A stretch of 63,744 nucleotides of DNA, the filler included, from Reticulomyxa filosa (taxonomy: Eukaryota > Protista > Foraminifera): assembly GCA_000512085.1 (NCBI GenBank). It is 21 parts of 21 records of this genome, joined end to end, with 100 filler letters (N's around TTAATTAATTAA, not from the genome) between each part and the next. Parts side by side here need not be neighbours in the genome. Positions count along the whole stretch, not along the records: positions 10,421 to 13,197 come from ASPP01024011.1; 20 more parts are not named here. The stretch is one strand, 5' to 3'. Position numbers and translations under genes: made by a program. The notes below the pieces were generated by a model. The model worked only from the letters and a program-made list of their open reading frames with translations, searched no databases and was not told the DNA's origin. Below, piece after piece: positions 9,045-63,744 of this stretch (the stretch's first letter is position 1; every line of letters begins with the position of its first letter).

Positions 9045-10320
9045 TTAATCAATATTGCCTTCAATGAGAAGAGGTTTTTTTCGTTTGGAAGATGTTTCAC
9101 CGGTGGAGTCTTGGTTGTTTTTGTGTGTGCTGTCAAATAAATTTTTGTTGCTATGCCATTTTTGTAACTCCTCTTCTTGAGTTCTACTAATTTCAGCCCG
9201 TAGCGTTTTAACCTCTTCATTGACTTGTGTAAGCTGTTTTTTATATCTGGCCAATCGCACTTGTGAAATGACCCAATGAGCAAAGACCCCTTTTGCACAA
9301 AGCATGCATACACACAGACACCATGTGCATGTACAATTTCCCAATGTATACATATACAATATACAGATGTATGTACATGTATATGTTGTATATACATATA
9401 TATATATTGTCTCTCTCTTACAATGCATTTATTTGTATTGACAAAAAACAAGAACAAACCCGCAGTTTTATTTTGCTGCGAAATGATATTAAATTTAAAA
9501 TTTTCGCGATTCATATATAAGCGATTAAGTGTTTCTAGCATGTCATCGCTGATGTAATCATTTTTGAATTTGATAATATTAGGAATGAAAAAGGGTTGCG
9601 ACAAAAATTTTGGAAATTTCTTTCCACGATCGTTGTTGTTCTTTTTTTTTATTTGCTTGTGCTTTTTTTGAAGCCTTGTTTTTTTTTTGTTATTATTATT
9701 ATTATTGTTAACATTTTTATTGGAATTGTTCGTATCGGTGCTGACAGTACTTTCGTCTCCAGACATGACCATTTCAGGTTCCGTGGTCGACGGTGTATCC
9801 TCATCGGTGGGGGACACGCCAGGAAAGTGTGGCGAGTGGAGCATATTTTGTTGTGTCATGAACATCAGCGCTTCGAACGTCATGCAAATTTCTTCGCTGA
9901 CATTTGTCATATTTTGTAGATCTTGGATTTCTTTCATTCGAATGTTCGTTATTGCCATTCGTGCTTTTTCACAAACATGTTGTGCTTGTTCCACCTTTTT
10001 TTTTTTTAAAAAAAAAAAATTTGCAATTGAAAAGAGTTATACGTTTCTTCTCCCCCCCCTTTTTTTTTATTTTATTATTATTATCAAAAAAAAAAAAAAA
10101 GAACCTTTGGCTGGTACAAATTTTGCAATTGCTGTGCGGCGACCAACTGCTGGACTAATTCTTGTGGAACGCCTCGTTGAGCCAAGAACTTGGTCATATC
10201 GGCAACGTACTGTTCTTCCAATTTGCCGAATTGGGCAATGTCTTGACACAGCTCAGAATAGCTGACCCACAAACTCTTTTTTTTGCTTTGGTCGCCATTT
10301 CTGCTGTCCCCGTCGTCGTC
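9045..10320 (-). CDS. Protein with a dynein stalk/microtubule-binding-domain-like module and short C-terminal tail (5' truncated)
   Basis: EQAQHVCEKARMAITNIRMKEIQDLQNM..ICMTFEALMFM, FIPNIIKF..YISDDMLETLNRLYMNRENFKFNIISQQNKTAG|VFAHWVISQVRLARY followed by coiled coil. This follows the CC1-MTBD-CC2 pattern of cytoplasmic dynein. A stop codon follows at 9045. Confidence 0.7.
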
Positions 10321-10420: not shown

Positions 10421-10457
<37 letters not shown>

Positions 10458-11257
10458 GAGAAGATCAAAAGGTGAGACAAAGAACAATGCCTGACTCCAA
10501 CAATTTCCATTCTCAACTTTGGTGAGTTCTTCACAAATGGAGTCAAATTTACTCTTCCATGGGTTGCACTGCTCTTGCAGCTGCCCGTCTGTTTTGAGTG
10601 ACTCTTTCGTTGCTACCCTTTCGTTTGTTAACACCTCCAAATTGCTTTGCAATCCCTTCATCTGCTTATCTTGCATCTCTGTCTCCGCTGTTTTGCACGT
10701 TGCAATTTGTTCCAATTCTGCGCATCGCAACTCGAGAGCTTGGCGTTCGCTTTTTTTTTTTTTTTTTTTTGATTGAATTGTTTTGTTTGTTTGTTTGTTT
10801 TGTTAACTTTTCAATGGCTTCGATCTGCTTATTCAACTGCTTGTTTTCATCAACCAACTTGGCTTGTATCAGTTCAGAGTGTTTTTCACATTCTTTGATC
10901 CGTTGCTTGCTATTGGCTTCTGTCTCTGCCAGCAAGGCTTTAAGACGACTCACTTCGCTACGTCCCTCTTTTTCATAGCGCACAAACAACTCCAAACGCT
11001 GGCTCAAGTCACGCATTGTACGCTTCTCTTCTATATGCTGCAGCTGCGTGGATACATATTCCCTGTCGTAAAAATAAAACAAAACAGAAATGCACAACCT
11101 CCCGATTTGCTCCTTGTGCAAAGTGATACGTCTGTCGATTTGTGTTTTCAGTAAACAAAATAAAAACTCACCCTTTAATACCCGGAGTAAATTGATTGTG
11201 ACCAAGCTTAGGAATTGCAGAGATATTTGTGGTGTCTTTGTTTTCAGAACCAGACAT
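10421..11257 (-). CDS. Coiled-coil protein with lamin/intermediate-filament-like N-terminus (3' truncated)
   Basis: Spliced start MSGSENKDTTNISAIPKLGHNQFTPGIKG|EYVSTQLQHIEEKRTMRDLSQRLELFVRYEKE, then continuous heptads. Frame-preserving GT-AG introns at ~11063-11171 and 10750-10807. Confidence 0.6.
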
Positions 11258-11876
11258 TTTAAATAGTGGACAAGATTTTTTTACTATACTTTTTCTGGTA
11301 CAGGGGAGATTTTTTTTTAAAAAAAAGCAGCACAGTACTGTCTAAATTGGAAAAGGTATATTTTGTCGAAAGGACTTTTTATATCCTCATAGCTGAAGCA
11401 CATTACATTTTTTCAATATCAAATGTATTCGAAACGAAATTAAAAAAGTAAAGAATAAAAAAAAGGCAAGCAGTCTCTCACACAATATCAACAGGGATTA
11501 CATTTTCAAGAAAGGTATTTCAATAGTGTTTTTTTTTAGTTAGATATGATTCAAACATGACAATACAGACATGCACACATCACATCTCTCGTAGCTGACA
11601 ACTGCTATAAAAAAAATTAAAACAGTAATTTGCACACGTATTTTCACTACGATTTGTCCACTTCTACTTAAAATAACTATCGTTATTTGTCAGTTTCACA
11701 AAGAGGAAAAAAAAAAAAAAAAAATGGAAATAATAAAAAATCCAAAGACAGAGGAGAGTGATAGCAACAGTAAAATAAAAATAAAAAATACGCACAAAAA
11801 AAAAAAAAAAAAAAAAAGACAAAAACGGAAAGAACATCATACGCACACACAACACAAGAAAATAAATTTCTTGGAT

Positions 11877-13197
11877 TCATAAACGAGTTTTTCTGAAAAA
11901 GGGATGCCATATTAAATCCTTTGAAGTCAATCTCTGCGAAGGATCCCAGGCTAAACACTTAACGATTAGATCAATGAAGTGATCGAGAGCCTCTGTTTGT
12001 ATGGATTCTTTATCCAACTCCGAAGAAGGAACGGTTTGCGTGCAGTTCTTAGAAGAGTCACTTTCATCTTGCTGTCCTTTCTCCTCTTTTTCTTTGTCCT
12101 GCGTTTCCAAAGATGGTTCAGCAGTAGTTTTTGTGCCTTCATTGAGAGGATGATCTTCCGGTTTCTGCTTAAGGTTTATATCGGTGTTATCAGCAGGACT
12201 AGGATTCGAATTAGTATTAGTATTATTGGAATTGGAATTGGAGTTAGGAGGAGTAGTGGCATGTTCATTAGCATTGGATATCGTGTTTGAGGCTTTCTGA
12301 CTTTCACTCGGTTTTGAAAATACGGGTAAGTCAATAACGCAAGCCAAAGATTGTTTCAAGTGTTCAATACCTTTCCATGCTATCTGTTGGGGTACTCTTT
12401 TTTTAAATTCGACTTGTAGTACATCCTCGAAGCCATCGGATACGTAGTACTGTTTTCGCAAAGGGCTCACTTCTAAAAGATACTTGGGACACTGTCTTTT
12501 TTTTTTCGCACAAATTTTTTGTTTTAAATTGAAACAGTCAAAAAAAAAATTTAAAATAATAAATTATTACGTATACAAACCTACCCAATCAAAGACATCA
12601 TATCGAAATGGTCAAAGCCATAAAAGAGTGGAAAGCCAATCAGCATTTCGACCAATATGCAAGCATAGCTCCACACGTCCCATCGATCACTCACACACTG
12701 TGACAAGTGTAGTATTAGTTCTGGTGAATGATACATAATGGTGCCTAGTTCGCACCAACTGCTATACGTCATTTCCATCAGGGAAGTGTCACACAATCGT
12801 AGTGAACTGCCCAGGTCAGCCACAAATATTTTCCAGCATTTGTCCTTTACGCTCTGGATCAAAATGTTCTCTACCTTCAAGTCCATGCACTATCTGCCGA
12901 GAATGCAGCAGCCGCAGGCCATGTGCGATTTGAAACCCGACCTTTTTCACCGCTGCCAATGGCAATCCTCGTCGTGATCGGCAATAACACCCCGCAAGCA
13001 CATGATATAGCGTCGCGTCGCACTACAACCGAAACCAACCACTTAAAAAAAAATTTTCTAACTCTGAAAAAAAAAAAATTTGTTTTTTTTTTTTAAGTTA
13101 GGAAATTTTCTCTTTTTTTTTTTAGTTAGAATTTTTTTAACTTTTGGAAACACCAAGCATAAATGGTCTCCGTACATGAAATATTCCAATAGTGGAA
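11877..13197 (-). CDS. Ser/Thr protein kinase, CMGC (DYRK/CLK-like), 5' truncated, with a frameshift in the catalytic loop
   Basis: GLPLAAVKK..LHSRQIVH / DLKVENILI, ADLGSS, GTIMYHSPE, DVWSYACILVEM..GFPLF, a long insert, then DLIVKCLAWDPSQRLT..HPFF. Confidence 0.85.
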
Positions 13198-17652: not shown

Positions 17653-20640
17653 TTAAAATTTATCATCCCAATTCAGCAACGAGGGATTATCGACTGCTTC
17701 ATCAACTTCTTGAGGTGGTGTTACTCTTGGAAAATATCTTAAGTCAGTGTCTGAAGTTAGAGTTGGAACATAAGGCGCAGGGATCTCTCTTCTTTCCATC
17801 TTTTCCCAATCAAAGCCCTGAACAGAAGAAATTTAAAAAAATGTATCTTTTTTTTGAGGTTTCTTTCCTTTTGGTCAATTTTTTTTTTTTTTTTTTGCTC
17901 CAAACTTTGAAAAAGGAATGTTTTTTGATTTCCTTTGCGCCTTGTGCCGAACCCAATCTTCGATAACAATTTTTTTCCAACAATTTTTCAACGAGATCCC
18001 TAAATTCGGCGGAACAACTTTTTGGAAATGCACAATTGTGGGCAATAATTTTTGATACATTTTACGTGCTCATCGTCTTCAAAGGGTGGAGAACCCGCAA
18101 CCATTTCGTATAGTAACACGCCTAACGTCCACCAGTCTACTGCAAATCCTTGGACCCAGCCGTGAAGTAATTCAGGCGCCAAATATTGTGGTGTTCCGCA
18201 AAGAGTCGTCGTGCTGACGAAAAAACAACAAACATTAAATTTTATAAAAAAAGAAAAAAAAAAAGGTAAATTTTTTTTAGCAACGTACACATTTCTTTTC
18301 TTTGCAAAGCCGAAATCGGTAAGTACAAGATAACCATTGGAATCAATTAAGAGCTGTGTGACACATAAAAAACGCTGGGTAAGTTTAGAATGACAAGATT
18401 TAAAAAAGGCATGAATGTGTGTATAATGTGATAGTAAAGAAAAGGAAGAAACAAACAAATCAAAATCAAACCAAACAAAAAACAGACATTCTCAGGTTTT
18501 AGGTCTCTGTAAATGATATCCTTGGAATGGATATGTTCAAATGCCAAAATGACACAAGCGGCATAAAAGCGAGAAGTAGTTCATCAAAATTCTGCTGTTG
18601 TCTCATAATTGTATACAATTCCCCACCCAACACCATTGTCTGCAAAAAAAAATACTGAAGTTTCGGTTTTGTACGTAGCATATCTATGTAACGCGGCCAT
18701 TCATTGTTTGTCTAAATCGAAACCAAATTTTGAAAATTGATAAATGGTGCATATGCACTATACACAAAACAAAAAAAACAACAACAAAAATAACAAAAAA
18801 CTCAACAGCTTGACGCAAAAGGGAGAATCCAATAGGCTCATGACTCTCTTTTCATTGAGAATGTGCCCAATTTGACCGGTATTGACAACCCTGACTTTGG
18901 ACACTTCTTTTAAAGCAAAGATTTGCTTGGTTTCGTTTTCACGCACTAAAGACACTTTTCCAAATGAGCCGAAGCCAACTAAAGCAATACTTTGCAAATC
19001 TCGCAATTGAAACGGAACTCGATTTTCAAAGGTCGAGGGGAGTTCGGAGTCGACCACTTCCTCATCTACGTGAATGTGTGTTCCCTGTGAAGCCATTATC
19101 AATCGAAAATCGTCGAGAGCGATACGCAGTAATTTGACCTCTGCTCCTTCCGCGCGTGCAGAGGAAAGCACCAATTCTTCGTCTGATACTTGGTACAGTT
19201 TTCGTCCAAACACGTCCCCAGGATTCAATTCGCTTGACACAATGTCCAACCCAAATTCTGATCCCTTTACGCGCTCTTTCTCAATCATCACACATCCCTA
19301 TGTGATCAATACGACACCAACGTAAAAAGTGGCCCACGAGTCATGTGACACACAAATAGAAACACAGAAAAAGGGGAGGGATCATCAACTGATTGAACAA
19401 TAAAAATGTCATTACACACAATATCGGGTGTTAAAATTTGTTGTTCGTGATGGTATACTTGTGTCCAGCATGCATGTGTCAGATTTAGCAATTCGTGATC
19501 TTCCAGCTTGGCTGTTTTTTTTTTTTTTAAAAAAAAAAAGGGGGAGACTTAAAAAAAGTTTTTTTTTTTTTTTTTTGAGAATGAACGAAACCCGCACGTA
19601 CAGATGAAACGAAGGAACAGTATTTTTTTTTTTTTTTAAGAAAAAAAAAATAAATAACTGAAAAGGGGAATTCTTCGCAAAAATCTCCTCTCTTTGTAAA
19701 AATCGATCTACATTCCATTGCGCCATTTTTGTACGAATGGCGTTGAAATCCATGGCTTCCAGCCCCCAGGCAGTGGAGGGCTGTGTGGCCTTTAACGTCG
19801 CGGTTCTGGGGGTACGATACATGAGTGCATATTCACCAACAGCATCTTTGGGTCCCGCCTCTCCAACTTTAATTTCAATGCCATCGTCCTCTTTTACAAG
19901 TATGTCGAACATACCTTTTTCAATCAAATAAAACGCGTCACCGACCTCACCTTGGGCGATCAGTATGTCATTGGGTTGCAGTTGCACTGGTTTCATCAAG
20001 CCGACCAATTTCGTCAGCATTCGTTCTCTTTGTTCGTCATCAACACTAGAGAAAAGATCGTTGGTTCGCAATACGTCTTTCAAAAACTTATTCAATTCGC
20101 CAATACAAATTTCATACATTTTATAAATTTACAAACACAAAAAAAAAAAAAAATACGACTTTTTTTTTTTACGTATAACTCAAACGAATAGCAAACACAA
20201 CAGCGCGTCATTTTACTAAACTTCGACTGGTTTTTCTACGCCTTCTCTAACCAGGTCACCAAACGCCTTGTTCACAGACAACACGCTGCTGCCACACCTC
20301 TCCAAGAGCGGGGGTTTGGTGCTGGTTAACGTATTGCGCTTTGCCAGGGTGAGATTAAAGTATCTTGTGTGTCGCCGTTTGTGAAACTTGCTAAGTTCAG
20401 CTCCATCCACAGGGCTAGGAGAGGTTGTTGCTATTCCCGCCTACACAAAAAAAAAAAAAAGATTTTTGCTGAGTAAGCAAAATTTTCATCTTTGTGTTCT
20501 CTAATTTTGCCTTTCTTCTCTTGTTTTCTCTATTTTATTGTATTCATACCTGATCTTGATTTCGTTCTTTCGACGCTTTGGCATATTTAGGTGCGTCACT
20601 CGATTCTTCTTTTCCGTCTTCGCCAATTCGCCCTAACTGG
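17653..20640 (-). CDS. PKG: cGMP-dependent protein kinase (two cNMP-binding domains + AGC kinase), multi-exon, 5' truncated
   Basis: cNMP cassette [14 protein letters not shown] (the Thr after Arg favours cGMP). Kinase motifs [42 protein letters not shown] tail GFDWEKM..PAPYVP..WDDKF*. Several 1-nt frameshifts. Confidence 0.9.
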
Positions 20641-22146: not shown

Positions 22147-23530
22147 ATGGCACAGCCCAACAAGACAAAATCTGTCATCTTGAATGAGAACGTAATCAAG
22201 GCATTCGGTATGAGCAAAGTGTTTCGGAATCTACCAACTGTGGGAACTTCAACCAACAACAAATCCAAGGAAAAGGAGAAGCAATCAACATCAGGAAATG
22301 AAGAACTGAGAATAACCGGGATGGACATAGACAACAGTGGGCAATATATTGTAACGTGCGACAATGACAATTGTATCAAATTTTATGATTGTTTAATCCC
22401 CAAGTTTGTGAAACCTCTTTGAAACAAACAGCACCATAATCTTATTTCATTTTCTCTGATCACGTGGAAAAGCTCCGTATTTTCGCACTTTTTTTTCCCA
22501 GTTTTTTTTTTTTTTTTTTTTTGTGTCTTGCAAAAGAAGACGAAAACAGAAGAAAAAAAAAAAAGAAAAACAAAACAGGTTACAGAAAACGGTGTACGTA
22601 AAAAATTTCGGTGTGGAATGCATTCAATTTACCCATCATAACAAATGTATATTAATGGGCTGCACGAAAGACCACGCAATACGATATCACAGTTTGCACG
22701 ACAATGTGTACTTGCGAACGTTTAGTGGACACACGGAAAAGATAACACACGTGAATATGCACCCGTTATCAGACCAATTCATGTCCTGTTCATTTGACAA
22801 AAGTATTAGGTTTTGGGATTTGAGGACGAGCGATTGCATAGCCAAACTGGAAGTTCCACAGAGACCAACCTGCGCGTACGACCGGGAAGGGTTGGTATTT
22901 GCCATTGGGACAGGAAAAAACGAATTAAAGTTATATGATAGTCGGCAATACGGAAGTGGCCCCTTTCAGACATTCAGTGACTTTCCAACTGAACCGAGTC
23001 ATGGTCGCGGTGACAATGCTCATAACCACAATGGCCATGGCGCAAACGAAAATGATAAAAGTCATTCCACCAATATACCAGGGACTCAGAGATATGAATG
23101 GAGCAATTTGGAATTTTCCCCCAATGGCAAACAAATATTGATCTCCACTCGCACAAATATGCTTATCTTAGTGGACGCTTTTGAGGGTAATGTGATACGT
23201 ACGTTAGAGTCGTTCGATAATAGCGAAAATAAAGACAGCTATGGCATATTCACTCCTGATAACTCTTTTGTATGCGTTCCTGAAAACGGGGATATTCATT
23301 TTTGGGACTTGAACAAATATCGAGATATTATTTGGAGAGGACATCCAAAGAAAATTGAAAGATTTCTATTTAATCCAAAATATTGTATGGCTGTCAGTGC
23401 GGCACAACATGTTGCCATTTGGTTGCCTGACGCCAAAAAAGTTCAACCACAGGTTCAAAACAAAGACGGAACTACCAATGAAAACATGAGTGTAATCAAG
23501 TCTTCGTTGAAAGGGAAGGGTAAAGACTGA
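22147..23530 (+). CDS. WDR82: WD repeat protein 82 / Swd2 (COMPASS and 3'-end/termination complexes), 2 exons
   Basis: CIQFTH, IRYHSLHDNVYLRTFSGH, SFDKSIRFWDLR, AYDREGLVFA, LYDSRQYGSGPFQTF, EFSPNGKQILIST, DAFEG, FNPKY. Intron 22404-22578. Confidence 0.95.
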
Positions 23531-42104: not shown

Positions 42105-44205
42105 ATGTCCAGGCTTGCGCGTGGTTTAACTCCGTCCAAAAAAACTCTTGTCTGTCAGAATTTGCACATATGATGTGGAAGCTGGAAGAAAAGAGCGATG
42201 AGGGCGTAGTATTACGGGTAAATCCCGTATCTTTGCTTTTTTTTTTTTGCGTGCATACATGTATATTTGTTTTTGGCTCCAAAAATCCAATATACAAAAA
42301 AAAAATGAAAGCTCTCAGAAACCAATGCCACGAAGATAGGAAAAGTGTTGTCCTCTTATGGCATGCAAACAAATGGACGACTGTCGCTGTACTTTATTGA
42401 GATCGACAGCAAAGAGGAGATAAGCGTGTCAGTAAAGTCAGGGGAGATTTACATCCATTGTAAATCTCGTGAGAAGAGTGTGGGACAAATGATCGGCGAC
42501 GCGCTTGTGATGGCGTCGGACGAGAAGAGATTGCAATCGACAATAAAGTTGGACGTGTGCAATTGTGAGATAGCGAACGTGTTGCAAAGCAACGTCGCGA
42601 ATAAAGCGTTGAAAGGACAGTTGTCCCTCCAAAACCTGAACGTGAGCGATCAATCCACGTTGGATCAGGTGTTGCAGTGGATTCAAAATGACAAGATTGT
42701 CTCCATTCGAAATCTCCGCTTTCGAAAAAACACGAAGCTTTCGTTTAAGCATTTCGGAAAGGCGCTGCTCGCCACGACGGCGTTGAAAGAATTGACGTGG
42801 TATCGCTGCGAAGAAGAAGGCATGGATATGAACCTCGACCAATTGAAACGACACGTCAAAGTCGTCAGTCAATTCAATTTCTCTTTGCTCGAGTTCGGAT
42901 GCATGTATTGCTCCTCTCGTCAGTGCAAGTCCTCTGTTTCTATTTGGTGGGAGTCAGTTCGAATACGCAACCTGGAGGGCCCGTCGGAGGATGATATGTC
43001 TTTGCGTGCCATTGCCATCGAGCCCAAGGAAGACATTAGAAAATCCTCGTTGAGTGAGCGGACGTCGCACGTGTCCAAGGTCGAAAGAAAAGAAACTGAG
43101 GCTGTTGTGCATCGAGTTAATTATATACGTTACATCTCTATATTTTGTTGACGATATAATATATATATTTGAAAATGGCAAAAAAAAAGACTTCCGAAGT
43201 TGGCTTCGCAAAGATAAGCGATATGCTGTCCTTGTACGAGTCCAAAGTGAAGGTGTCGCTTTCACTTAGCTCTTCTTTGGCTGAGAAGAAACAACAACAA
43301 CAACAACAACAACAATCACCTTGGCGGAGTGGAATGTGTCCAGCGCAACTTGCCAAACAAATCCTCTCCAAAAATTTTGCCTTGTCCCAGGCCCACTTTG
43401 ATGCTGAACAAGACTTGTGCTATTGTAACGAATGCTGCGCCAAACGAAACGACAAAGACTGTTATTTCCGAGGCAAGCCTCCCATGAAGTATGTCATTCC
43501 AAGAGGGTGGGTTCGCGTCGGACTCCAAGTCCCCAAAGGCAAGGTCTTGGACAATAAAGTTTTTGATGAGTGGCATGTCGCATTTCATGGAACTGATGTC
43601 GATGGAGTGCGTGGCATTTTCAATTGCGGCTTGCAATTGCTCAAACCTGGCGATGTCAAATTGGGTGGAGATAAAATTTCCATTTCAAGAGGACATATTA
43701 TGAGGCCTTTTCAAAGAACTAATCTATATACCAATGAAGAGGAGTTATTTGATCCAAATCAAATCTTTACAAGTCCATCCATCAAGTTCAATTTTATTTG
43801 TATACGCTTGTACATATTTGTCTATGCTTGCACTTGTTTATACGATAGATATGCCGCTCATGGCTGCTATGCCAAGTCATTCTATTGTGAGCATCCTCAA
43901 GATCGCAATCGCTTTTTGCGGGTGGAGTTTGGCTTTCAAGTTATGTGAAACTCCATTTTTTTTTGTGCTGCTACTCTACTATATACACGCCGCACATTAT
44001 AATGTATTTTTGTTCCCAGGTGCGCCAAAGACCAGGATCGTATTCAATTGGTCAAGAAACGGTTGGGGCGATGCGTGATGGGATTGTACTGGACGAATAT
44101 TTTAATAATAGTGAATTGGAATGGTATACACAAGAAAATGTTGGTATTGTTGTTTATGGGCTGTTGATGAAAATCAGAGAAGCAGATACCAATCCTTCAC
44201 CCTAA
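42105..44205 (+). CDS. Protein with a C-terminal NEURL4-type ADP-ribosyltransferase domain, multi-exon, start uncertain
   Basis: CYCNEC..RGKPPMKYVIPRGWVRVGL, WHVAFHGT, LLKPGD, IFTSPSIK|YA, FQ|VRQRPGSY, ELEW, VYGLLMKI reproduce the NEURL4 C-terminal ART pattern. Confidence 0.85.
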
Positions 44206-56911: not shown

Positions 56912-58681
56912 TCAAAAGTGCAACACATCCGCGCTAGCACGGACAGGATAGCTGACTCCAGTTGCGCGCAAAGGATAAGCCGGACGATACAAACAAGGGG
57001 GGTTGTTAAAAACAAGAGGCGACAATTTGTTCCAAGCTGCAGGCGCTGTTACCTGTGTTGGTCTCACTGTCGTTGTTGTCATTGTCGTTGTCGTTGACAC
57101 TTGTGGTCCGATATAAACACGAGTATTGCATGTGCTCATCTTTTCCACATCCTTGCACATTTCTGTCCTTGCATCTTGGTGCACGTGAATGTGCAAGGGG
57201 TCACTATTGTATCTTGCCGTCGTTGGCACGTGCAAATGCAAGATATCATCGCTATTGTTATTGTTATTATTATTATTATTATCATTATTATTGGTATTGG
57301 TATTGGTATTGGCATCTGCATCGTTGATAGTGAAACATCGACGAGGAGGGGAAGGGGAAGGTGTCCTCGGCAACGTATCCAACGCTTCCGATTTGTTATG
57401 TGTTCCAAAGGCTGCGCCCAGTGGCTCACTTTGCGCACGCAACAACAACAAGCCATCATTCAAGTCTCCACTTGCCATCGACTCCGTTTTTTGCAAGCTA
57501 TTGACATTACGCTCCATTTTGCAACCCATTTGTTGCTGTTGCTGTTGCTGTTGCTGATTTGATGGCTCGCCTTTTCTCAAACACACTTTTCTCAAATCAA
57601 GGAAGGGCGACACTTCATTACACTTGCGTCTACGCGATGAAAATGGCGACGGGGTCAAACACTTTTGCGTCCCATCCTTATCGTCCAACGCTTTCAAGTT
57701 CATGTTGCACAGTACCTTAAAGTCTTTCTCAATGTCCTTGTTTGGAAATACCACGTCTATTCATTCACAATCCCCGCGCGCAAGACATTTGTTTTTGCTG
57801 AGTGTGTAAATCACGGACTTTTTTTTTTTTTTTTAAAAAAAGTGTTATTTGCAAACTCATTAAAAATATTAACAAAATATATATATGTGTATATATACAT
57901 ATATATATGTATATATACCTGGCTTTGACGGCGACGTAGCACAAAGTTGATCGACACAGCCCACACGATTTGCTTCCATCTCCAACTCCATCTCTCGGAT
58001 GCGGTCTTTGCCGACAGCGTCAATGGCTTGAATGTTGGCCGTGCGGTACATGCACGAGTTGTCGTGCGTCAATCGGGTCGTTTGTGAAAACAGGCGTCGT
58101 CGAGGTGAAACCTCCTTCAGCAATTTATGTCCGTTATGTCCGTGTTTCACCACAAAGTTCGAACGGCGAGCTATCCATTTGTCGTTTTGTGTTTGCAAAT
58201 TTTGAACACACCAAAAAAAAAAAATTATTATATATATACATATATATATATATATATGTATATATGTATATATACTCTCAACGTTGCTCTCCGACACATG
58301 CTAATGTTACATTTAATACTTGCGAACCAATTCGCAACTGAGGCAGTGCAAATACTTTTTGTACGCTACTTTGGTCCACAAATGTTACGAAACCGTACCC
58401 TCGGGAACGGACTCGAAATCTTTTTTTTTTTTTTTTCGGAGTTTTGGTCACTCTGAGAGTGTTACCAACAAGACTTTTTTTTTTTAGGGAGAAAAATATT
58501 ACCTGTCCGCAATAATAACTGCTTCTCGGATCGCACCAAACACTTTAAAAAAATCAAACAACTTTTGTGATGTGACGTCGTGAGGCAGATTGCCCACAAA
58601 CAGCTTCAGGTCTCTTGTGTCGACGTACTTGGTGCCTCCAACGCCAACTGGACAAAAATCTTGGGGATTGAAGTGGGTCAT
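56912..58681 (-). CDS. Single N-terminal RRM RNA-binding protein (RBM24/38-like RRM) with long disordered tail
   Basis: DTRDLKLFVGNL (RNP2), FGAIREAVIIADR|FRVRSRGYGFVTF (RNP1), LNVTLAC. Downstream exons carry polyQ, polyN and T tracts. Confidence 0.82.
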
Positions 58682-61958: not shown

Positions 61959-63744
61959 TTTTTTTTTTTTGCAACATGTGCAAAGTGGAAACTCAACTCT
62001 CTGTCATCAACAAACGCTTTGATTCCAACTTTCTTCAGGCGTTCAACAAAGTCGTGACACAATTGATTGGTTGCATCTTGCTTGTTATCTGTGGTCTTAA
62101 AATGAATCGGAATAATAACTACTTGCCATTGAGCAACCCGAGGAGGCAATACAAGTCCTTTGTTATCCGAGTGCGACATAATCATGACCCCGATCGATCT
62201 TGTTGTGAATCCCCAACTATTTTGAACCACATACTTGGGTTCATTTTTCTCATCCAAGTATTTAATGTTGAACATTTTGGCAAAGTTCTCTCCTAAGCAA
62301 TGGCTTGTCGCGCCTTGGATTCCCCTTCCAGAGCCAGAAATATATGCCTCTACAGTTGTGGATAAGTCTGCGCCAGGAAACGTTTCCCCTTTTGTTTTTT
62401 TTCCTTTAATGGTTGGAATTGCGCAAACGTCTCTGTACGTGCGGGCATACATATCCAATATTTCGTACACTTCTTTCAATGCTGATTCCATAGTGGGATG
62501 GGCTGTGTGGCCTTCTTGCCACAAAAACTCTCGCGTTCTCAAAAATGGAGTCGGGTTTTTAAACTCCCATCGCACAACATTGCACCACTGATTGATTTTC
62601 AACGGTAAATCTCGGAATGAACGGATCCAACGGCGAAACATTGGATACATGATTGTTTCCTTTTCATATGTTTATATATGTATATGCACATGTATATAAA
62701 TAACAACATATGAAAACGTTTTTAAATCACTTGCTCTCCTTGCCCTCTTTTTTAAAATTTTAATTCTAATGTTGAAGTGCAACTGGTTATAATTCGGATT
62801 TGTTTTACAAAACTGAGGTCGGTCGAACAGCCAATTTCTTTTCCAAGGGCGTGTTTCCAGAGTGTGTCACCCAAGCCACCTCGGGACTGAAATCTTCAAA
62901 GTGCTTGGCCTCACTTTTGAGCGCATCTTCGGAGACGAACAAAGGAAAGTATGTGTTGGAGACTCCCATTTTTTTGATTTCCTCGTCCATAAAGTTTTTG
63001 ATGCATTCCCACATGAAATACGAAGCAGGACGCAAGACATAGCATCCACTGATATCAGTGTAATCTATCAACTCACATTTGATCACCAGCTCTTTGAACC
63101 ATTCTCCAAATTCGGTGAATTTGTCATGGGTTATTCCTTCTTGTTCACTACTCCCTGTCTTTTGCTCTTTCGCATCTTTCACCACGGGTTGTTGTGATGC
63201 TGCCTTTTTGGGCTTTTGTGTTACCGATGCTGCCTTTGCATCGTCCAAGTACTTCTTCGCATCTTTTTTTTTTTTTTTTTAAGTCAATCACAACAATGCG
63301 TGTTTTTTTTTTCTTTATTTATTTTCATAACGCATTATAAATATATAATATAATGCATATTGTTACAAACGTTTTCTGGACGCAACTTTCTCCAAAGAAA
63401 TTGTCCATGTCGACATACTGAAGGGGATTACCATAAGCGGCACAGTATTTCTCAAGGTCGCTGGGCTTAATCCCGACTGTGGCTTCATTGGTTCCAGGAT
63501 AAATGTTCAAATACTCTGCGTTTTGCAAAGCAGTGTCAACGATGACTTGAACTTCTTTGTGTCCGTCAAATATCACTGCCAATGGAGTCACGCATCCATG
63601 AGGCATTGACAAGTAATATTCCGCATCCGCACTTCTCAGTCCACCTCCGACTCCCTTATTATTATTATTATTTCACATTTGGTTTTCTTCCATTGGTGTT
63701 GCTGCATTAAAAAAAAAAGAACACACAAACATAGACAAACCAAA
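61959..63744 (-). CDS. ProRS: Prolyl-tRNA synthetase (eukaryotic/archaeal type) with N-terminal YbaK/ProX editing domain, truncated at both ends
   Basis: [21 protein letters not shown] (ProX). Catalytic motifs [80 protein letters not shown]. Confidence 0.97.

What the first reader, a model, noticed from the sequence alone, without database searches (positions are those of the whole stretch)
10750..10807. Introns with poly(A)-AG acceptors and no polypyrimidine tract: candidate unusual 3' splice-site system
Seen: many frame-restoring GT-AG introns end in an adenine run directly before AG. The extreme case is this 58-nt intron, GTTAAC(AAAC)n..A20-G, which has no pyrimidine tract at all. Others are 9995-10104(-), 22404-22578(+, WDR82), 43116-43189(+, ART), 58420-58502(-, inside an RRM where conservation fixes the junction), the acceptor at 63263(-, ProRS), YKT6 intron 1 and a PKG intron near 19510. 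Conventional pyrimidine acceptors coexist (~44020; YKT6 intron 2). Established: U2AF65 normally reads a U-rich tract next to the AG. Inference: this lineage may define many acceptors in another way, for example divergent U2AF, AG scanning through AG-free A runs, or an A-binding factor.
Basis: partly seen in the sequence, partly recalled or inferred. Interest (0 to 1): 0.8.

Follow-up and report, generated by a model that had tools for sequence, protein, structure and literature searches.

The report
Intron with poly(A) before its AG
A 58-base intron in a lamin-like gene of the foraminifer Reticulomyxa filosa ends in twenty adenines plus G with no pyrimidine tract. Comparison with three sister genes shows it is a genuine intron, and similar A-run acceptors recur nearby, but no RNA data were available to show how, or whether, it is spliced.

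Summary
Window 10807-10750 (minus strand) is a 58-nt GT..AG intron, GTTAAC-(AAAC)n-..-A20-G. It has no pyrimidine in its last 21 nt and no other AG or GT inside.

The piece is a whole 2777-bp contig of Reticulomyxa filosa. Three paralogues in the same assembly have an intron at the same position and phase. Removing the 58 nt restores the 44-residue spacing seen in a paralogue. The paralogous introns end in ordinary T/C-rich tracts, so the A-run is interchangeable with a pyrimidine tract.

I curated 19 complete introns on four contigs by frame and homology.
- Five end in A5 or more plus G. These include a kinase intron in this piece (A10G, the only in-frame AG).
- A GET4 intron ends A10TA6TA3G.
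- A at -3 is as common at acceptors as at internal AGs (47% vs 48%).
- Six of eleven intronic A-run-G sites are not acceptors.

Enrichment of A next to acceptors is significant but rests on a small sample.

Best reading: an ordinary intron whose 3' site is chosen without a pyrimidine tract, probably as the first AG after an AG-free stretch. Homopolymer slippage would supply the A-runs. A dedicated A-tract recognition system is not shown. No RNA evidence could be obtained.

The parts
10750..10807 (-). Index intron (intron 2 of the lamin-like gene A), 58 nt, phase 2, GTTAAC...A20-G
   Evidence: Searches give the sequence, composition and frame. One search shows an intron at the same position and phase, after GAAAA|GTT, in all four paralogues. 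Searches show that the spliced spacing equals that of the paralogue P0004.
10750..10770 (-). Acceptor tract: A20 (10770-10751) followed by G (10750); the last A and the G form the AG
   Evidence: homopolymer of 20. (no pyrimidine in the last 21 nt).
10782..10800 (-). (AAAC)n microsatellite inside the intron
   Evidence: TRF finds period 4, 4.8 copies, 100% matches (TTTG on the + strand).
10808..11062 (-). Exon 2 of gene A (coiled-coil start, ...EEKRTMRDLSQRLELFVRYEKEGRSEV...)
   Evidence: three paralogues with E 7e-11 to 7e-14; alignment.
10518..10749 (-). Exon 3 of gene A (ERQALELRCAELEQ...CEELTK)
   Evidence: The donor AAA|GTTGAG at 10517 sits at the intron position the paralogues share after EELAK.
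10421..10517 (-). Intron 3 of gene A, cut by the contig end; GTTGAG...CTCC-T19-A17
   Evidence: Its 3' end is unknown.
11063..11171 (-). Intron 1 of gene A, GTGAGT...TTTTGTTTTATTTTTACGACAG (conventional T-rich acceptor)
   Evidence: Exon 2 has no in-frame ATG upstream of conserved sequence, so exon 1 is needed.
11172..11257 (-). Exon 1 of gene A with ATG at 11257
12496..12584 (-). Intron of the neighbouring CMGC-type kinase gene, GTAGGT...GCG-A10-G; second A-run acceptor in the piece
   Evidence: Only this AG keeps the frame (LIG|QCPKYLL); the ACAG at 12494-12491 leads to a stop.
13023..13141 (-). Upstream kinase intron, GTTAAA...GGTTGGTTTCGGTTGTAG; it contains a skipped CTAAC-T-A11-G
   Evidence: One search reports an internal 28-nt duplication.
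11877..12495 (-). Last exon of the kinase gene (ends at stop 11877-11879)
12585..13022 (-). Kinase exon with a frameshift in the catalytic loop near 12886-12890
   Evidence: frames abut at Pfam Pkinase positions 121/122..

Best explanation
Window 10807-10750 is a genuine GT-AG spliceosomal intron of a lamin-like coiled-coil gene of Reticulomyxa filosa. The stretch where a polypyrimidine tract would normally lie has been replaced by an A-rich microsatellite and a 20-A homopolymer.

Shown:
- The intron position and phase are inherited and shared by four paralogues.
- The tract before the AG is free to vary between pyrimidine-rich and pure A.
- A-run acceptors recur in unrelated genes (kinase, GET4).

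Inferred:
- In this organism the 3' splice site is chosen without need of a U-rich tract next to the AG. It is most likely the first AG downstream of a degenerate branch region.
- An A-run is compatible with this because it cannot contain an AG. It is not sufficient to mark an acceptor, since several A-run-G sites inside introns are not used.
- The A-runs arise by replication slippage in a genome full of A/T homopolymers and are tolerated, perhaps mildly favoured, next to acceptors.
For: Identity:
- The contig is ASPP01024011.1 of GCA_000512085.1.
- The paralogues are named Reticulomyxa filosa by NCBI.

The intron is real:
- It has GT..AG ends and restores the frame. Read-through terminates.
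- All four paralogues carry a phase-2 intron after GAAAA|GTT.
- From the E before the junction to LTNE is 44 residues both in the spliced window gene and in P0004.

The tract is interchangeable:
- Paralogous acceptors at this position are C/T-rich, T/G-rich, or T-rich plus CCAAAAG.

Recurrence:
- A5-or-more-G acceptors occur in 5 of 19 curated introns: A20, A10, A10, A7, A5.
- GET4 intron 1 ends A10TA6TA3G, with 2 pyrimidines in 20 nt.

Enrichment:
- Binomial test against 5.3% of all AGs: P 0.003; 0.014 without the index intron; 0.005 for the high-confidence set without the index.
- A fraction at -3..-12 is 0.43 against 0.32 in interiors, Monte Carlo P 0.018.
- 23 A-runs placed at random in 2084 nt of intron would abut an acceptor 0.2 times; 5 do.

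First-AG rule:
- The AG-free stretch before the acceptor is 12-121 nt in all 19 introns.
- The index intron has no other AG at all.

There is no pyrimidine preference at -3: A 9, C 6, T 4, G 0.
Against: - No RNA evidence: no sequencing run could be listed, so splicing at this AG is inferred, not seen.
- The sample is 19 introns from four contigs, and 11 of them come from paralogues of one gene family.
- Conditional on being an AG, acceptors are not clearly richer in A-runs than internal intronic AGs (5/19 vs 6/61). Fisher one-sided P is 0.08, or 0.16 without the index intron.
- AAG is equally frequent in both classes.
- L002 intron 4 uses a TAG 14 nt downstream of an A10G, an exception to a simple first-AG rule unless the branch lies in or after that run.
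- No yTnAy branch motif lies within 40 nt of the AG in the index intron or in several others, so the branch site is unknown.
- The assembly shows frameshifts in conserved coding sequence, so the homopolymer length and the integrity of some copies are uncertain.
Confidence: 0.6

Rival explanations
1. Instructive A-tract. R. filosa has a factor that reads an A-run next to the AG as an acceptor signal. This could be a diverged U2AF large subunit or another RRM protein. Poly(A)-AG would then be a second, lineage-specific class of 3' splice site.
For: - A-runs abut acceptors about 25 times more often than random placement predicts (5 observed vs 0.2 expected).
- In the high-confidence subset, A5G acceptors are 5/15 against 3/49 internal AGs (Fisher P 0.014).
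- A-runs lie towards the 3' part of introns and T-runs towards the 5' part (median relative positions 0.69 vs 0.35, Mann-Whitney P 0.003). This is the reverse of the usual polarity.
- The 5' splice sites are also atypical (A|GTT), so the machinery may be diverged.
Against: - The A-run is not conserved at homologous intron positions.
- Six of 11 intronic A5-or-more-G sites are skipped. One of them is CTAAC-T-A11-G in the kinase intron, which has a perfect branch-like motif.
- Pyrimidine-rich acceptors are just as common.
- No splicing factor of this organism could be examined with the tools and caps available.
Confidence: 0.15
2. Decaying paralogue. Gene A is one of four redundant copies. Its ancestral pyrimidine tract was overrun by an expanding A-rich microsatellite, and the intron is now spliced poorly or not at all. 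On this reading the copy is a pseudogene in the making.
For: - The other three paralogues keep T/C-rich tracts at this position.
- The contig's neighbouring kinase has a frameshift in its catalytic loop.
- Other frameshifts occur in GET4 and at L002 intron 6.
- There is no RNA evidence.
Against: - Exons 1-3 of gene A are open and conserved as far as the contig end.
- A-run acceptors also occur in the apparently single-copy GET4 gene and in other paralogues at other intron positions.
- The GT, the AG and the exact length needed for the frame are all intact.
Confidence: 0.12
3. Pure composition effect. The spliceosome of R. filosa is ordinary and uses upstream T-runs as its pyrimidine tract. A-runs before AG are only what a 35% GC, homopolymer-laden genome gives, and the index intron is an outlier of no general meaning.
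For: - 44% of all AGs in 17.4 kb are AAG and 5.3% are AAAAAG.
- There is one A/T run of 8 or more per 290 bp.
- The AAG share is identical at acceptors and internal AGs.
- Positions -13..-22 are T-rich (47% T), so many introns have a displaced T tract.
Against: - The index intron has only 5 T in 58 nt and no run longer than TT, so it has no tract to use.
- GET4 intron 1 has 2 pyrimidines in its last 20 nt.
- The enrichment tests are significant in most formulations.
Confidence: 0.1
4. Not an intron. The stretch would be a lysine-rich low-complexity coding insert whose frame is broken by a homopolymer length error in the assembly.
For: - The read-through frame is open across the stretch (KLTKQTNKQNNSIKKKKKKK).
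- The assembly has indel-like frameshifts elsewhere.
- A prokaryote-style gene call (P0001) reads through it.
Against: - No paralogue has an insert here. All have an intron at exactly this codon position.
- Removal reproduces the 44-residue spacing of P0004.
- The boundaries are GT and AG.
Confidence: 0.03

Closest known systems
Branch-point-to-first-AG selection of 3' splice sites in budding yeast, where the pyrimidine tract is dispensable (established knowledge, from memory)
   Same: - The acceptor is the first AG after an AG-free stretch (12-121 nt in 19 of 19 introns).
- No pyrimidine tract is needed in at least the index intron and GET4 intron 1.
- Introns are short.
   Different: - Yeast has a rigid UACUAAC branch site and GUAUGU donors. 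Here no branch consensus is visible and donors are A|GTT.
- Yeast acceptors still prefer YAG. Here A at -3 is the commonest base (9/19).
Entamoeba transformed splicing signals: GUUUGUU...UAG with a co-evolved U1 snRNA (PMC3561952; bioRxiv 10.1101/2022.06.08.495308)
   Same: - AT-rich short introns.
- T at intron position +3, which is rare in eukaryotes.
- Atypical 3' intronic sequence.
- Branch motifs that are hard to tell from background.
   Different: - Entamoeba has a strict extended consensus at both ends (GUUUGUU, UAG) and few introns.
- R. filosa shows only GTT at the donor, with variable +4..+6.
- Its acceptors range from pyrimidine-rich to pure A.
- No R. filosa U1 gene was available to examine. 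Rfam found nothing on the four contigs.
AG-dependent introns with weak pyrimidine tracts in animals, which rely on the small U2AF subunit reading the AG (established knowledge, from memory)
   Same: A weak or absent U-tract, with the AG itself as the main 3' signal.
   Different: Those introns still have some pyrimidine enrichment and YAG. An uninterrupted A20 abutting the AG is not, to my knowledge, a described natural acceptor class.
AG-avoidance model of the 3' intron region (PMC10946897)
   Same: That paper attributes part of the composition of the tract before the acceptor to selection against premature AG. An A-run satisfies AG avoidance as well as a pyrimidine run does.
   Different: The paper also finds selection for pyrimidines in Drosophila. 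Here pyrimidines are not favoured at -3..-12 (T 0.32 vs 0.42 in interiors).

Membership tests
Major (U2-type) GT-AG spliceosomal intron | GT at the 5' end and AG at the 3' end | tested here: met
   GT at 10807-10806, AG at 10751-10750.
Major (U2-type) GT-AG spliceosomal intron | Removal restores the reading frame and colinearity with homologues | tested here: met
   the junction reads IEAIE-N-ERQALEL, and the 44-residue spacing equals that of paralogue P0004.
Major (U2-type) GT-AG spliceosomal intron | Intron position and phase shared with homologous genes | tested here: met
   phase 2 after GAAAA|GTT in L001-L004.
Major (U2-type) GT-AG spliceosomal intron | 5' splice site complementary to canonical U1 (GTRAGT) | tested here: not met
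   The donor is GTTAAC. Across 23 donors, +3 is T in 19 and -1 is A in 19.
Major (U2-type) GT-AG spliceosomal intron | Branch motif yTnAy 10-40 nt upstream of the AG | tested here: inconclusive
   no strict match in the index intron. TTCAA, 24 nt upstream, is the nearest approximation. Motifs are degenerate in the other introns too.
Major (U2-type) GT-AG spliceosomal intron | Polypyrimidine tract between branch site and AG | tested here: not met
   0 pyrimidines in the last 21 nt, and the longest pyrimidine run in the intron is 3.
Major (U2-type) GT-AG spliceosomal intron | Spliced RNA observed | not testable with these tools
   no run was listed. The read-laying tool therefore could not be used.
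Minor (U12-type) intron | RTATCCTT donor and TCCTTAAC branch site | tested here: not met
   The sequence contains neither motif.
Yeast-like first-AG selection without a pyrimidine tract | The acceptor is the first AG after an AG-free zone downstream of the branch | tested here: met
   AG-free stretches of 12-121 nt before all 19 acceptors. The index intron has no other AG.
Yeast-like first-AG selection without a pyrimidine tract | Strongly conserved branch sequence that anchors the scan | tested here: not met
   no consensus among the 19 introns.
Yeast-like first-AG selection without a pyrimidine tract | U2AF large subunit absent or dispensable | not testable with these tools
Fused branch-acceptor motif of diplomonads and parabasalids (ACTAACACACAG) | Conserved motif ending in the acceptor AG | tested here: not met
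   acceptor contexts are heterogeneous. ACAG endings occur in 4 of 19, without the motif.
Low-complexity coding insert (not an intron) | Open frame continuous with both flanks, and an insert present in homologues | tested here: not met
   read-through shifts the frame and stops at 10666; the paralogues have introns here, not inserts.

The most novel reading that the evidence does not exclude
Reticulomyxa filosa, and perhaps Foraminifera more widely, has a remodelled intron code. Donors are A|GTT instead of G|GTRAGT. Acceptors carry no pyrimidine requirement. An adenine run abutting the AG is a positively recognised acceptor element, read by a diverged U2AF-like or other A-binding factor. T-runs are displaced to the 5' part of introns.
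Probability: 0.15. Interest if true: 0.8.

Novelty: new variant of a known kind. Interest (0 to 1): 0.5.

Why it matters
The U-rich tract read by U2AF65 and the YAG acceptor are among the most general rules of pre-mRNA splicing. An organism in which about a quarter of sampled introns end in an adenine run, and in which A is the commonest base at -3, would be a natural test case. The same holds for its donors, which are A|GTT. It could show how the 3' splice site is found when the usual tract is absent. It would also matter for gene prediction in Foraminifera. The GenBank models on these contigs read through real introns and invent 25- and 32-nt ones.

If the pattern is only tolerated slippage, it still shows how little sequence between branch site and AG is needed in a short-intron eukaryote.

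Tried and rejected
RNA evidence:
- The look-up of sequencing runs listed no run, so read laying could not be used.

Homologue and database searches:
- The read-through ORF found only the contig's own ORF call.
- The alignment search found only the four R. filosa paralogues.
- The kinase exon shared no words with any candidate, which ended the route to more R. filosa contigs.
The single-protein metagenome scan was blank.

Gene models:
- GenBank gene models proved unreliable as evidence. P0002's model reads through intron 2 and contains 25- and 32-nt introns. All junctions were therefore curated by frame and paralogue or Pfam colinearity.

Kinase junction:
- PDB alignments did not reach the LIG|QCP junction.
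- That junction rests on frame logic and on a remembered similarity to HIPK2 (G-x4-YLL).

Structure and motif ideas, both rejected:
- Hairpin idea: a 5' T-run pairs with the 3' A-run. It holds for L002 3950-4043 (z -3.4 to -4.1), but not in general (mean z -0.18), and not for the index intron (MFE 0).
- Branch-motif idea: yTnAy sits just before the A-run. No consistent motif was found.

Other blanks:
- Rfam scan of the four contigs for snRNA genes found nothing.
- The R. filosa genome paper is not in the held library.
- No held paper describes R. filosa acceptors.

Step left out:
- The joined (spliced) protein was not sent to any search tool. Only a 17-residue junction peptide was printed, inside a script.

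Full report
**What the piece is.**
Places 10421-13197 are one whole contig, ASPP01024011.1 (2777 bp), of assembly GCA_000512085.1. NCBI names the related proteins of that assembly as Reticulomyxa filosa. Published tables give this assembly 101.9 Mb, 50,809 contigs, N50 3.6 kb and 35% GC, with about 2 introns per gene of mean length 87 bp (PMC13746701, PMC10245619). Both genes on the contig lie on the minus strand.

**The observation.**
On the minus strand the stretch 10807-10750 reads GTTAAC AAAAC (AAAC)3 AAAAC AATTCAATC A20 G.
- It is 58 nt: 43 A, 8 C, 2 G, 5 T.
- It has no pyrimidine in the last 21 nt and no pyrimidine run longer than 3.
- It has no AG before the terminal one and no GT after the first.
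- TRF reports the 20-base homopolymer and the 4-nt microsatellite.
- Reading through gives ...IEAIEKLTKQTNKQNNSIKKKKKKKRTPSS... and a stop at 10666.
- Removing the 58 nt joins ...NKQIEAIE-N-ERQALELRCAELEQ... in frame.

**Is it a real intron?**
Exon 2 (84 aa) finds three paralogues among 1.84 billion representatives: P0002, P0003 and P0004, with E 7e-14 to 7e-11. All three are on other contigs of the same assembly.

In all four genes the coding frame breaks at the same codon position, phase 2, after GAAAA|GTT.

| Copy | Donor | Intron end |
|---|---|---|
| window copy | GTTAAC | A20G (58 nt) |
| L002 | GTTGAA | TTGTTTTTTTATTTAATCCAAAAG |
| L003 | GTTGAT | TTTTTGTTGTTGTTCCGAACAG |
| L004 | GTTATG | CATTCTTTTCCTCTCCTCGCAG |

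The GenBank model of P0004 is spliced here. In it, the distance from the E before the junction to the conserved LTNE is 44 residues. The spliced window gene gives the same 44, with matching residues along the way. P0002 and P0003 show F/Y/I/V-rich junk at this point because their models read through T-rich introns.

The position and the exact boundaries, or boundaries of the same length, are therefore fixed by comparison and not by frame alone. The alternative of a lysine-rich coding insert with a homopolymer error is excluded for practical purposes.

**What the paralogues say about the A-run.**
The same inherited intron carries a textbook C/T tract in one copy and T/G-rich tracts in two. It carries a pure A tract in the window copy. 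The tract before the AG is thus not conserved, and pyrimidines and adenines are interchangeable there.

**Recurrence.**
I curated every intron on the four contigs (17.4 kb) whose ends could be fixed by frame plus paralogue or Pfam colinearity. This gave 19 complete introns and 4 further donors. GenBank models were not trusted. P0002's model reads through intron 2 and contains 25- and 32-nt introns.

Five of the 19 introns end in A5 or more plus G:
- the index intron (A20);
- the kinase intron in this piece, 12584-12496 (GCG-A10-G);
- L002 3950-4043 (CCCT-A10-G);
- L004 2405-2536 (T6-C-A7-G);
- L004 2092-2185 (ACATAC-A5-G).

In the kinase intron, A10G is the only AG that keeps the frame, giving LIG|QCPKYLL. 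The ACAG four bases on leads to a stop.

Three further cases are close to this class.
- GET4 intron 1 on L002 ends GTGATT-A10-T-A6-T-AAAG, with 2 pyrimidines in 20 nt. Its junction reproduces the SH(G)QQ...DL spacing I recall for GET4 proteins (Pfam GET4 on the flanking exons).
- L002 intron 2 ends CCAAAAG.
- L002 intron 6 ends T7-A7-G but has a boundary problem, described below.
- Gene A's intron 3 runs T19-A17 into the contig end.

Conventional acceptors coexist: gene A intron 1, L002 intron 1 and L004 intron 2.

**Is this more than composition?**
The background is extreme.
- There is an A/T run of 8 or more every 290 bp.
- 44% of all AGs on both strands are AAG, and 5.3% are AAAAAG.

Against that 5.3%, the binomial tests give:

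| Set | A5G acceptors | P |
|---|---|---|
| all introns | 5 of 19 | 0.003 |
| without the index intron | 4 of 18 | 0.014 |
| high-confidence, without the index | 4 of 14 | 0.005 |

The other tests point the same way, but less uniformly.
- The A fraction at -3..-12 is 0.43 against 0.32 in interiors, and T falls from 0.42 to 0.32. Against random windows of the same introns, P is 0.018 for all introns, 0.04 without the index intron, and 0.0001-0.0004 for the high-confidence set.
- Twenty-three A-runs placed at random would abut an acceptor 0.2 times; 5 do.
- Conditional on being an intronic AG, the contrast is weaker. It is 5/19 against 6/61, with Fisher one-sided P 0.08, or 0.16 without the index intron. 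For the high-confidence set P is 0.014 to 0.038.
- AAG is exactly as common at acceptors (9/19) as at internal AGs (29/61).

At -3 the counts are A 9, C 6, T 4, G 0. The near-universal pyrimidine preference at -3 is therefore absent.

The enrichment of A next to acceptors is real in this sample, but the sample is small. Eleven of the 19 introns come from one gene family, although their tracts are not alignable.

**Limits on an A-signal model.**
Six of the 11 intronic A5-or-more-G sites are not acceptors.
- One is CTAAC-T-A11-G, 30 nt into the upstream kinase intron.
- One is an A10G lying 14 nt before the frame-correct TAG of L002 intron 4.
- One is the T16-A10-G at the start of GET4 intron 2.

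An A-run followed by G is therefore not sufficient. What acceptors do share is a preceding AG-free stretch of 12-121 nt. No yTnAy motif is consistently placed.

Pairing of 5' T-runs with 3' A-runs makes L002 3950-4043 a strong hairpin (MFE -22.4, z -3.4 to -4.1). The index intron, by contrast, is unstructured (MFE 0), and the 19 introns average z -0.18.

**Mechanism proposed.**
- Shown: an inherited intron whose pre-AG tract varies freely among paralogues and can be pure A.
- Inferred: 3' site choice in R. filosa does not need a U-tract next to the AG. It most likely takes the first AG downstream of a degenerate branch region. TTCAA, 24 nt upstream, is the nearest branch-like sequence in the index intron.
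- Inferred: A-runs arise by slippage, cannot create premature AGs, and end in AG whenever the next base is G.

A diverged U2AF or an A-binding factor remains possible (about 0.15) but untested.

**Comparison with known systems.**
- The nearest functional analogue is yeast-type first-AG selection. It differs in having a rigid branch site and YAG acceptors.
- The nearest lineage-level analogue is Entamoeba, with GUUUGUU...UAG and a co-evolved U1 (PMC3561952; bioRxiv 10.1101/2022.06.08.495308).
- The AG-avoidance view of the 3' tract (PMC10946897) fits an A-run as well as a pyrimidine run.
- I found no paper in the held library that describes R. filosa acceptors. The genome paper itself is not held.

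**Verdict.**
- A-run acceptors recur and are enriched in a small sample.
- The claim of a distinct 3' splice-site system is not established.
- No RNA evidence could be obtained.
- The joined spliced protein was not sent to any search tool. Exons were searched apart.

Noticed in passing
23 donors on window 10421-13197 and loci L002-L004 (e.g. window 10807, 10517, 13141; L002 3629, 3950, 4206, 4536): The 5' splice sites are A|GTT, not G|GTRAGT. The -1 base is A in 19 of 23 donors and +3 is T in 19 of 23, that is at 9 of 13 independent intron positions. Positions +4..+6 are variable. T at +3 is rare in eukaryotes. Entamoeba (GUUUGU, with a co-evolved U1) is the known precedent.
   Followed up: partly
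L002 3276-5888 (+); paralogues at window 10421-11257 (-), L003 752-1778, L004 1072-2764: The host gene family looks like a foraminiferal lamin. The coiled-coil rod begins EKRxxRDLNxRLxxFVR and ends QLDNEIA(V)YRTIL. It is followed by a KRK-rich linker and a weak Pfam Lamin Tail Domain hit (E 0.05, below threshold). An ORF ends in the CaaX-like CLIM. GenBank names P0002 'condensin, SMC5-subunit'. There are four paralogues in the assembly.
   Followed up: partly
window 12886-12890 (-): There is a frameshift in the kinase catalytic loop. ...LHSRQIVH and MDLKVENIL are in different frames that overlap by 'AT', and they abut at Pfam Pkinase positions 121/122. This is either an assembly indel or a pseudogene.
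   Followed up: partly
L002 about 8050-7985 (-) and L002 4799-4889 (+): Two more frame problems occur in conserved coding sequence. GET4 changes frame within an exon. Lamin intron 6 gives EIA|VYRTIL only with GT..AA or TT..AG ends or a missing G. A canonical GTGCTT donor would insert 11 residues into the conserved motif. Either way the acceptor is T7-A7-G.
   Followed up: partly
L002 3950-4043: This 94-nt intron is a near-perfect hairpin. The T11 near the donor pairs with the A10 of the acceptor, and GGTTGCAAATC pairs with GATTTGCACC. MFE is -22.4 kcal/mol, z -3.4 to -4.1. It could be a palindromic insertion inside an old intron.
   Followed up: partly
19 curated introns on L001-L004: Homopolymer polarity inside introns is reversed. 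T-runs sit towards the 5' part (median relative position 0.35) and A-runs towards the 3' part (0.69), Mann-Whitney P 0.003. T(n)A(n) blocks are frequent: window 10421-10456 and 11310-11326; L002 7605-7580 (-).
   Followed up: partly
L002 3276-5341, window 12886-11683: The GenBank gene models are unreliable here. P0002's model reads through a real intron and contains 25- and 32-nt introns. The 347-aa kinase model extends past the natural stop at 11877 into poly-T-encoded sequence.
   Followed up: partly
L002 9432-10059 (+): An arginase-family gene (Pfam E 3e-22) is cut by the contig end just after a GTCTAAG donor and a T33 run. Several contigs end in long A/T homopolymers, which probably break the assembly.
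   Followed up: no
window 13085-13145: The upstream kinase intron contains a 28-nt tandem duplication carrying a CTAAC-T(T)-A(11-12) module twice.
   Followed up: no
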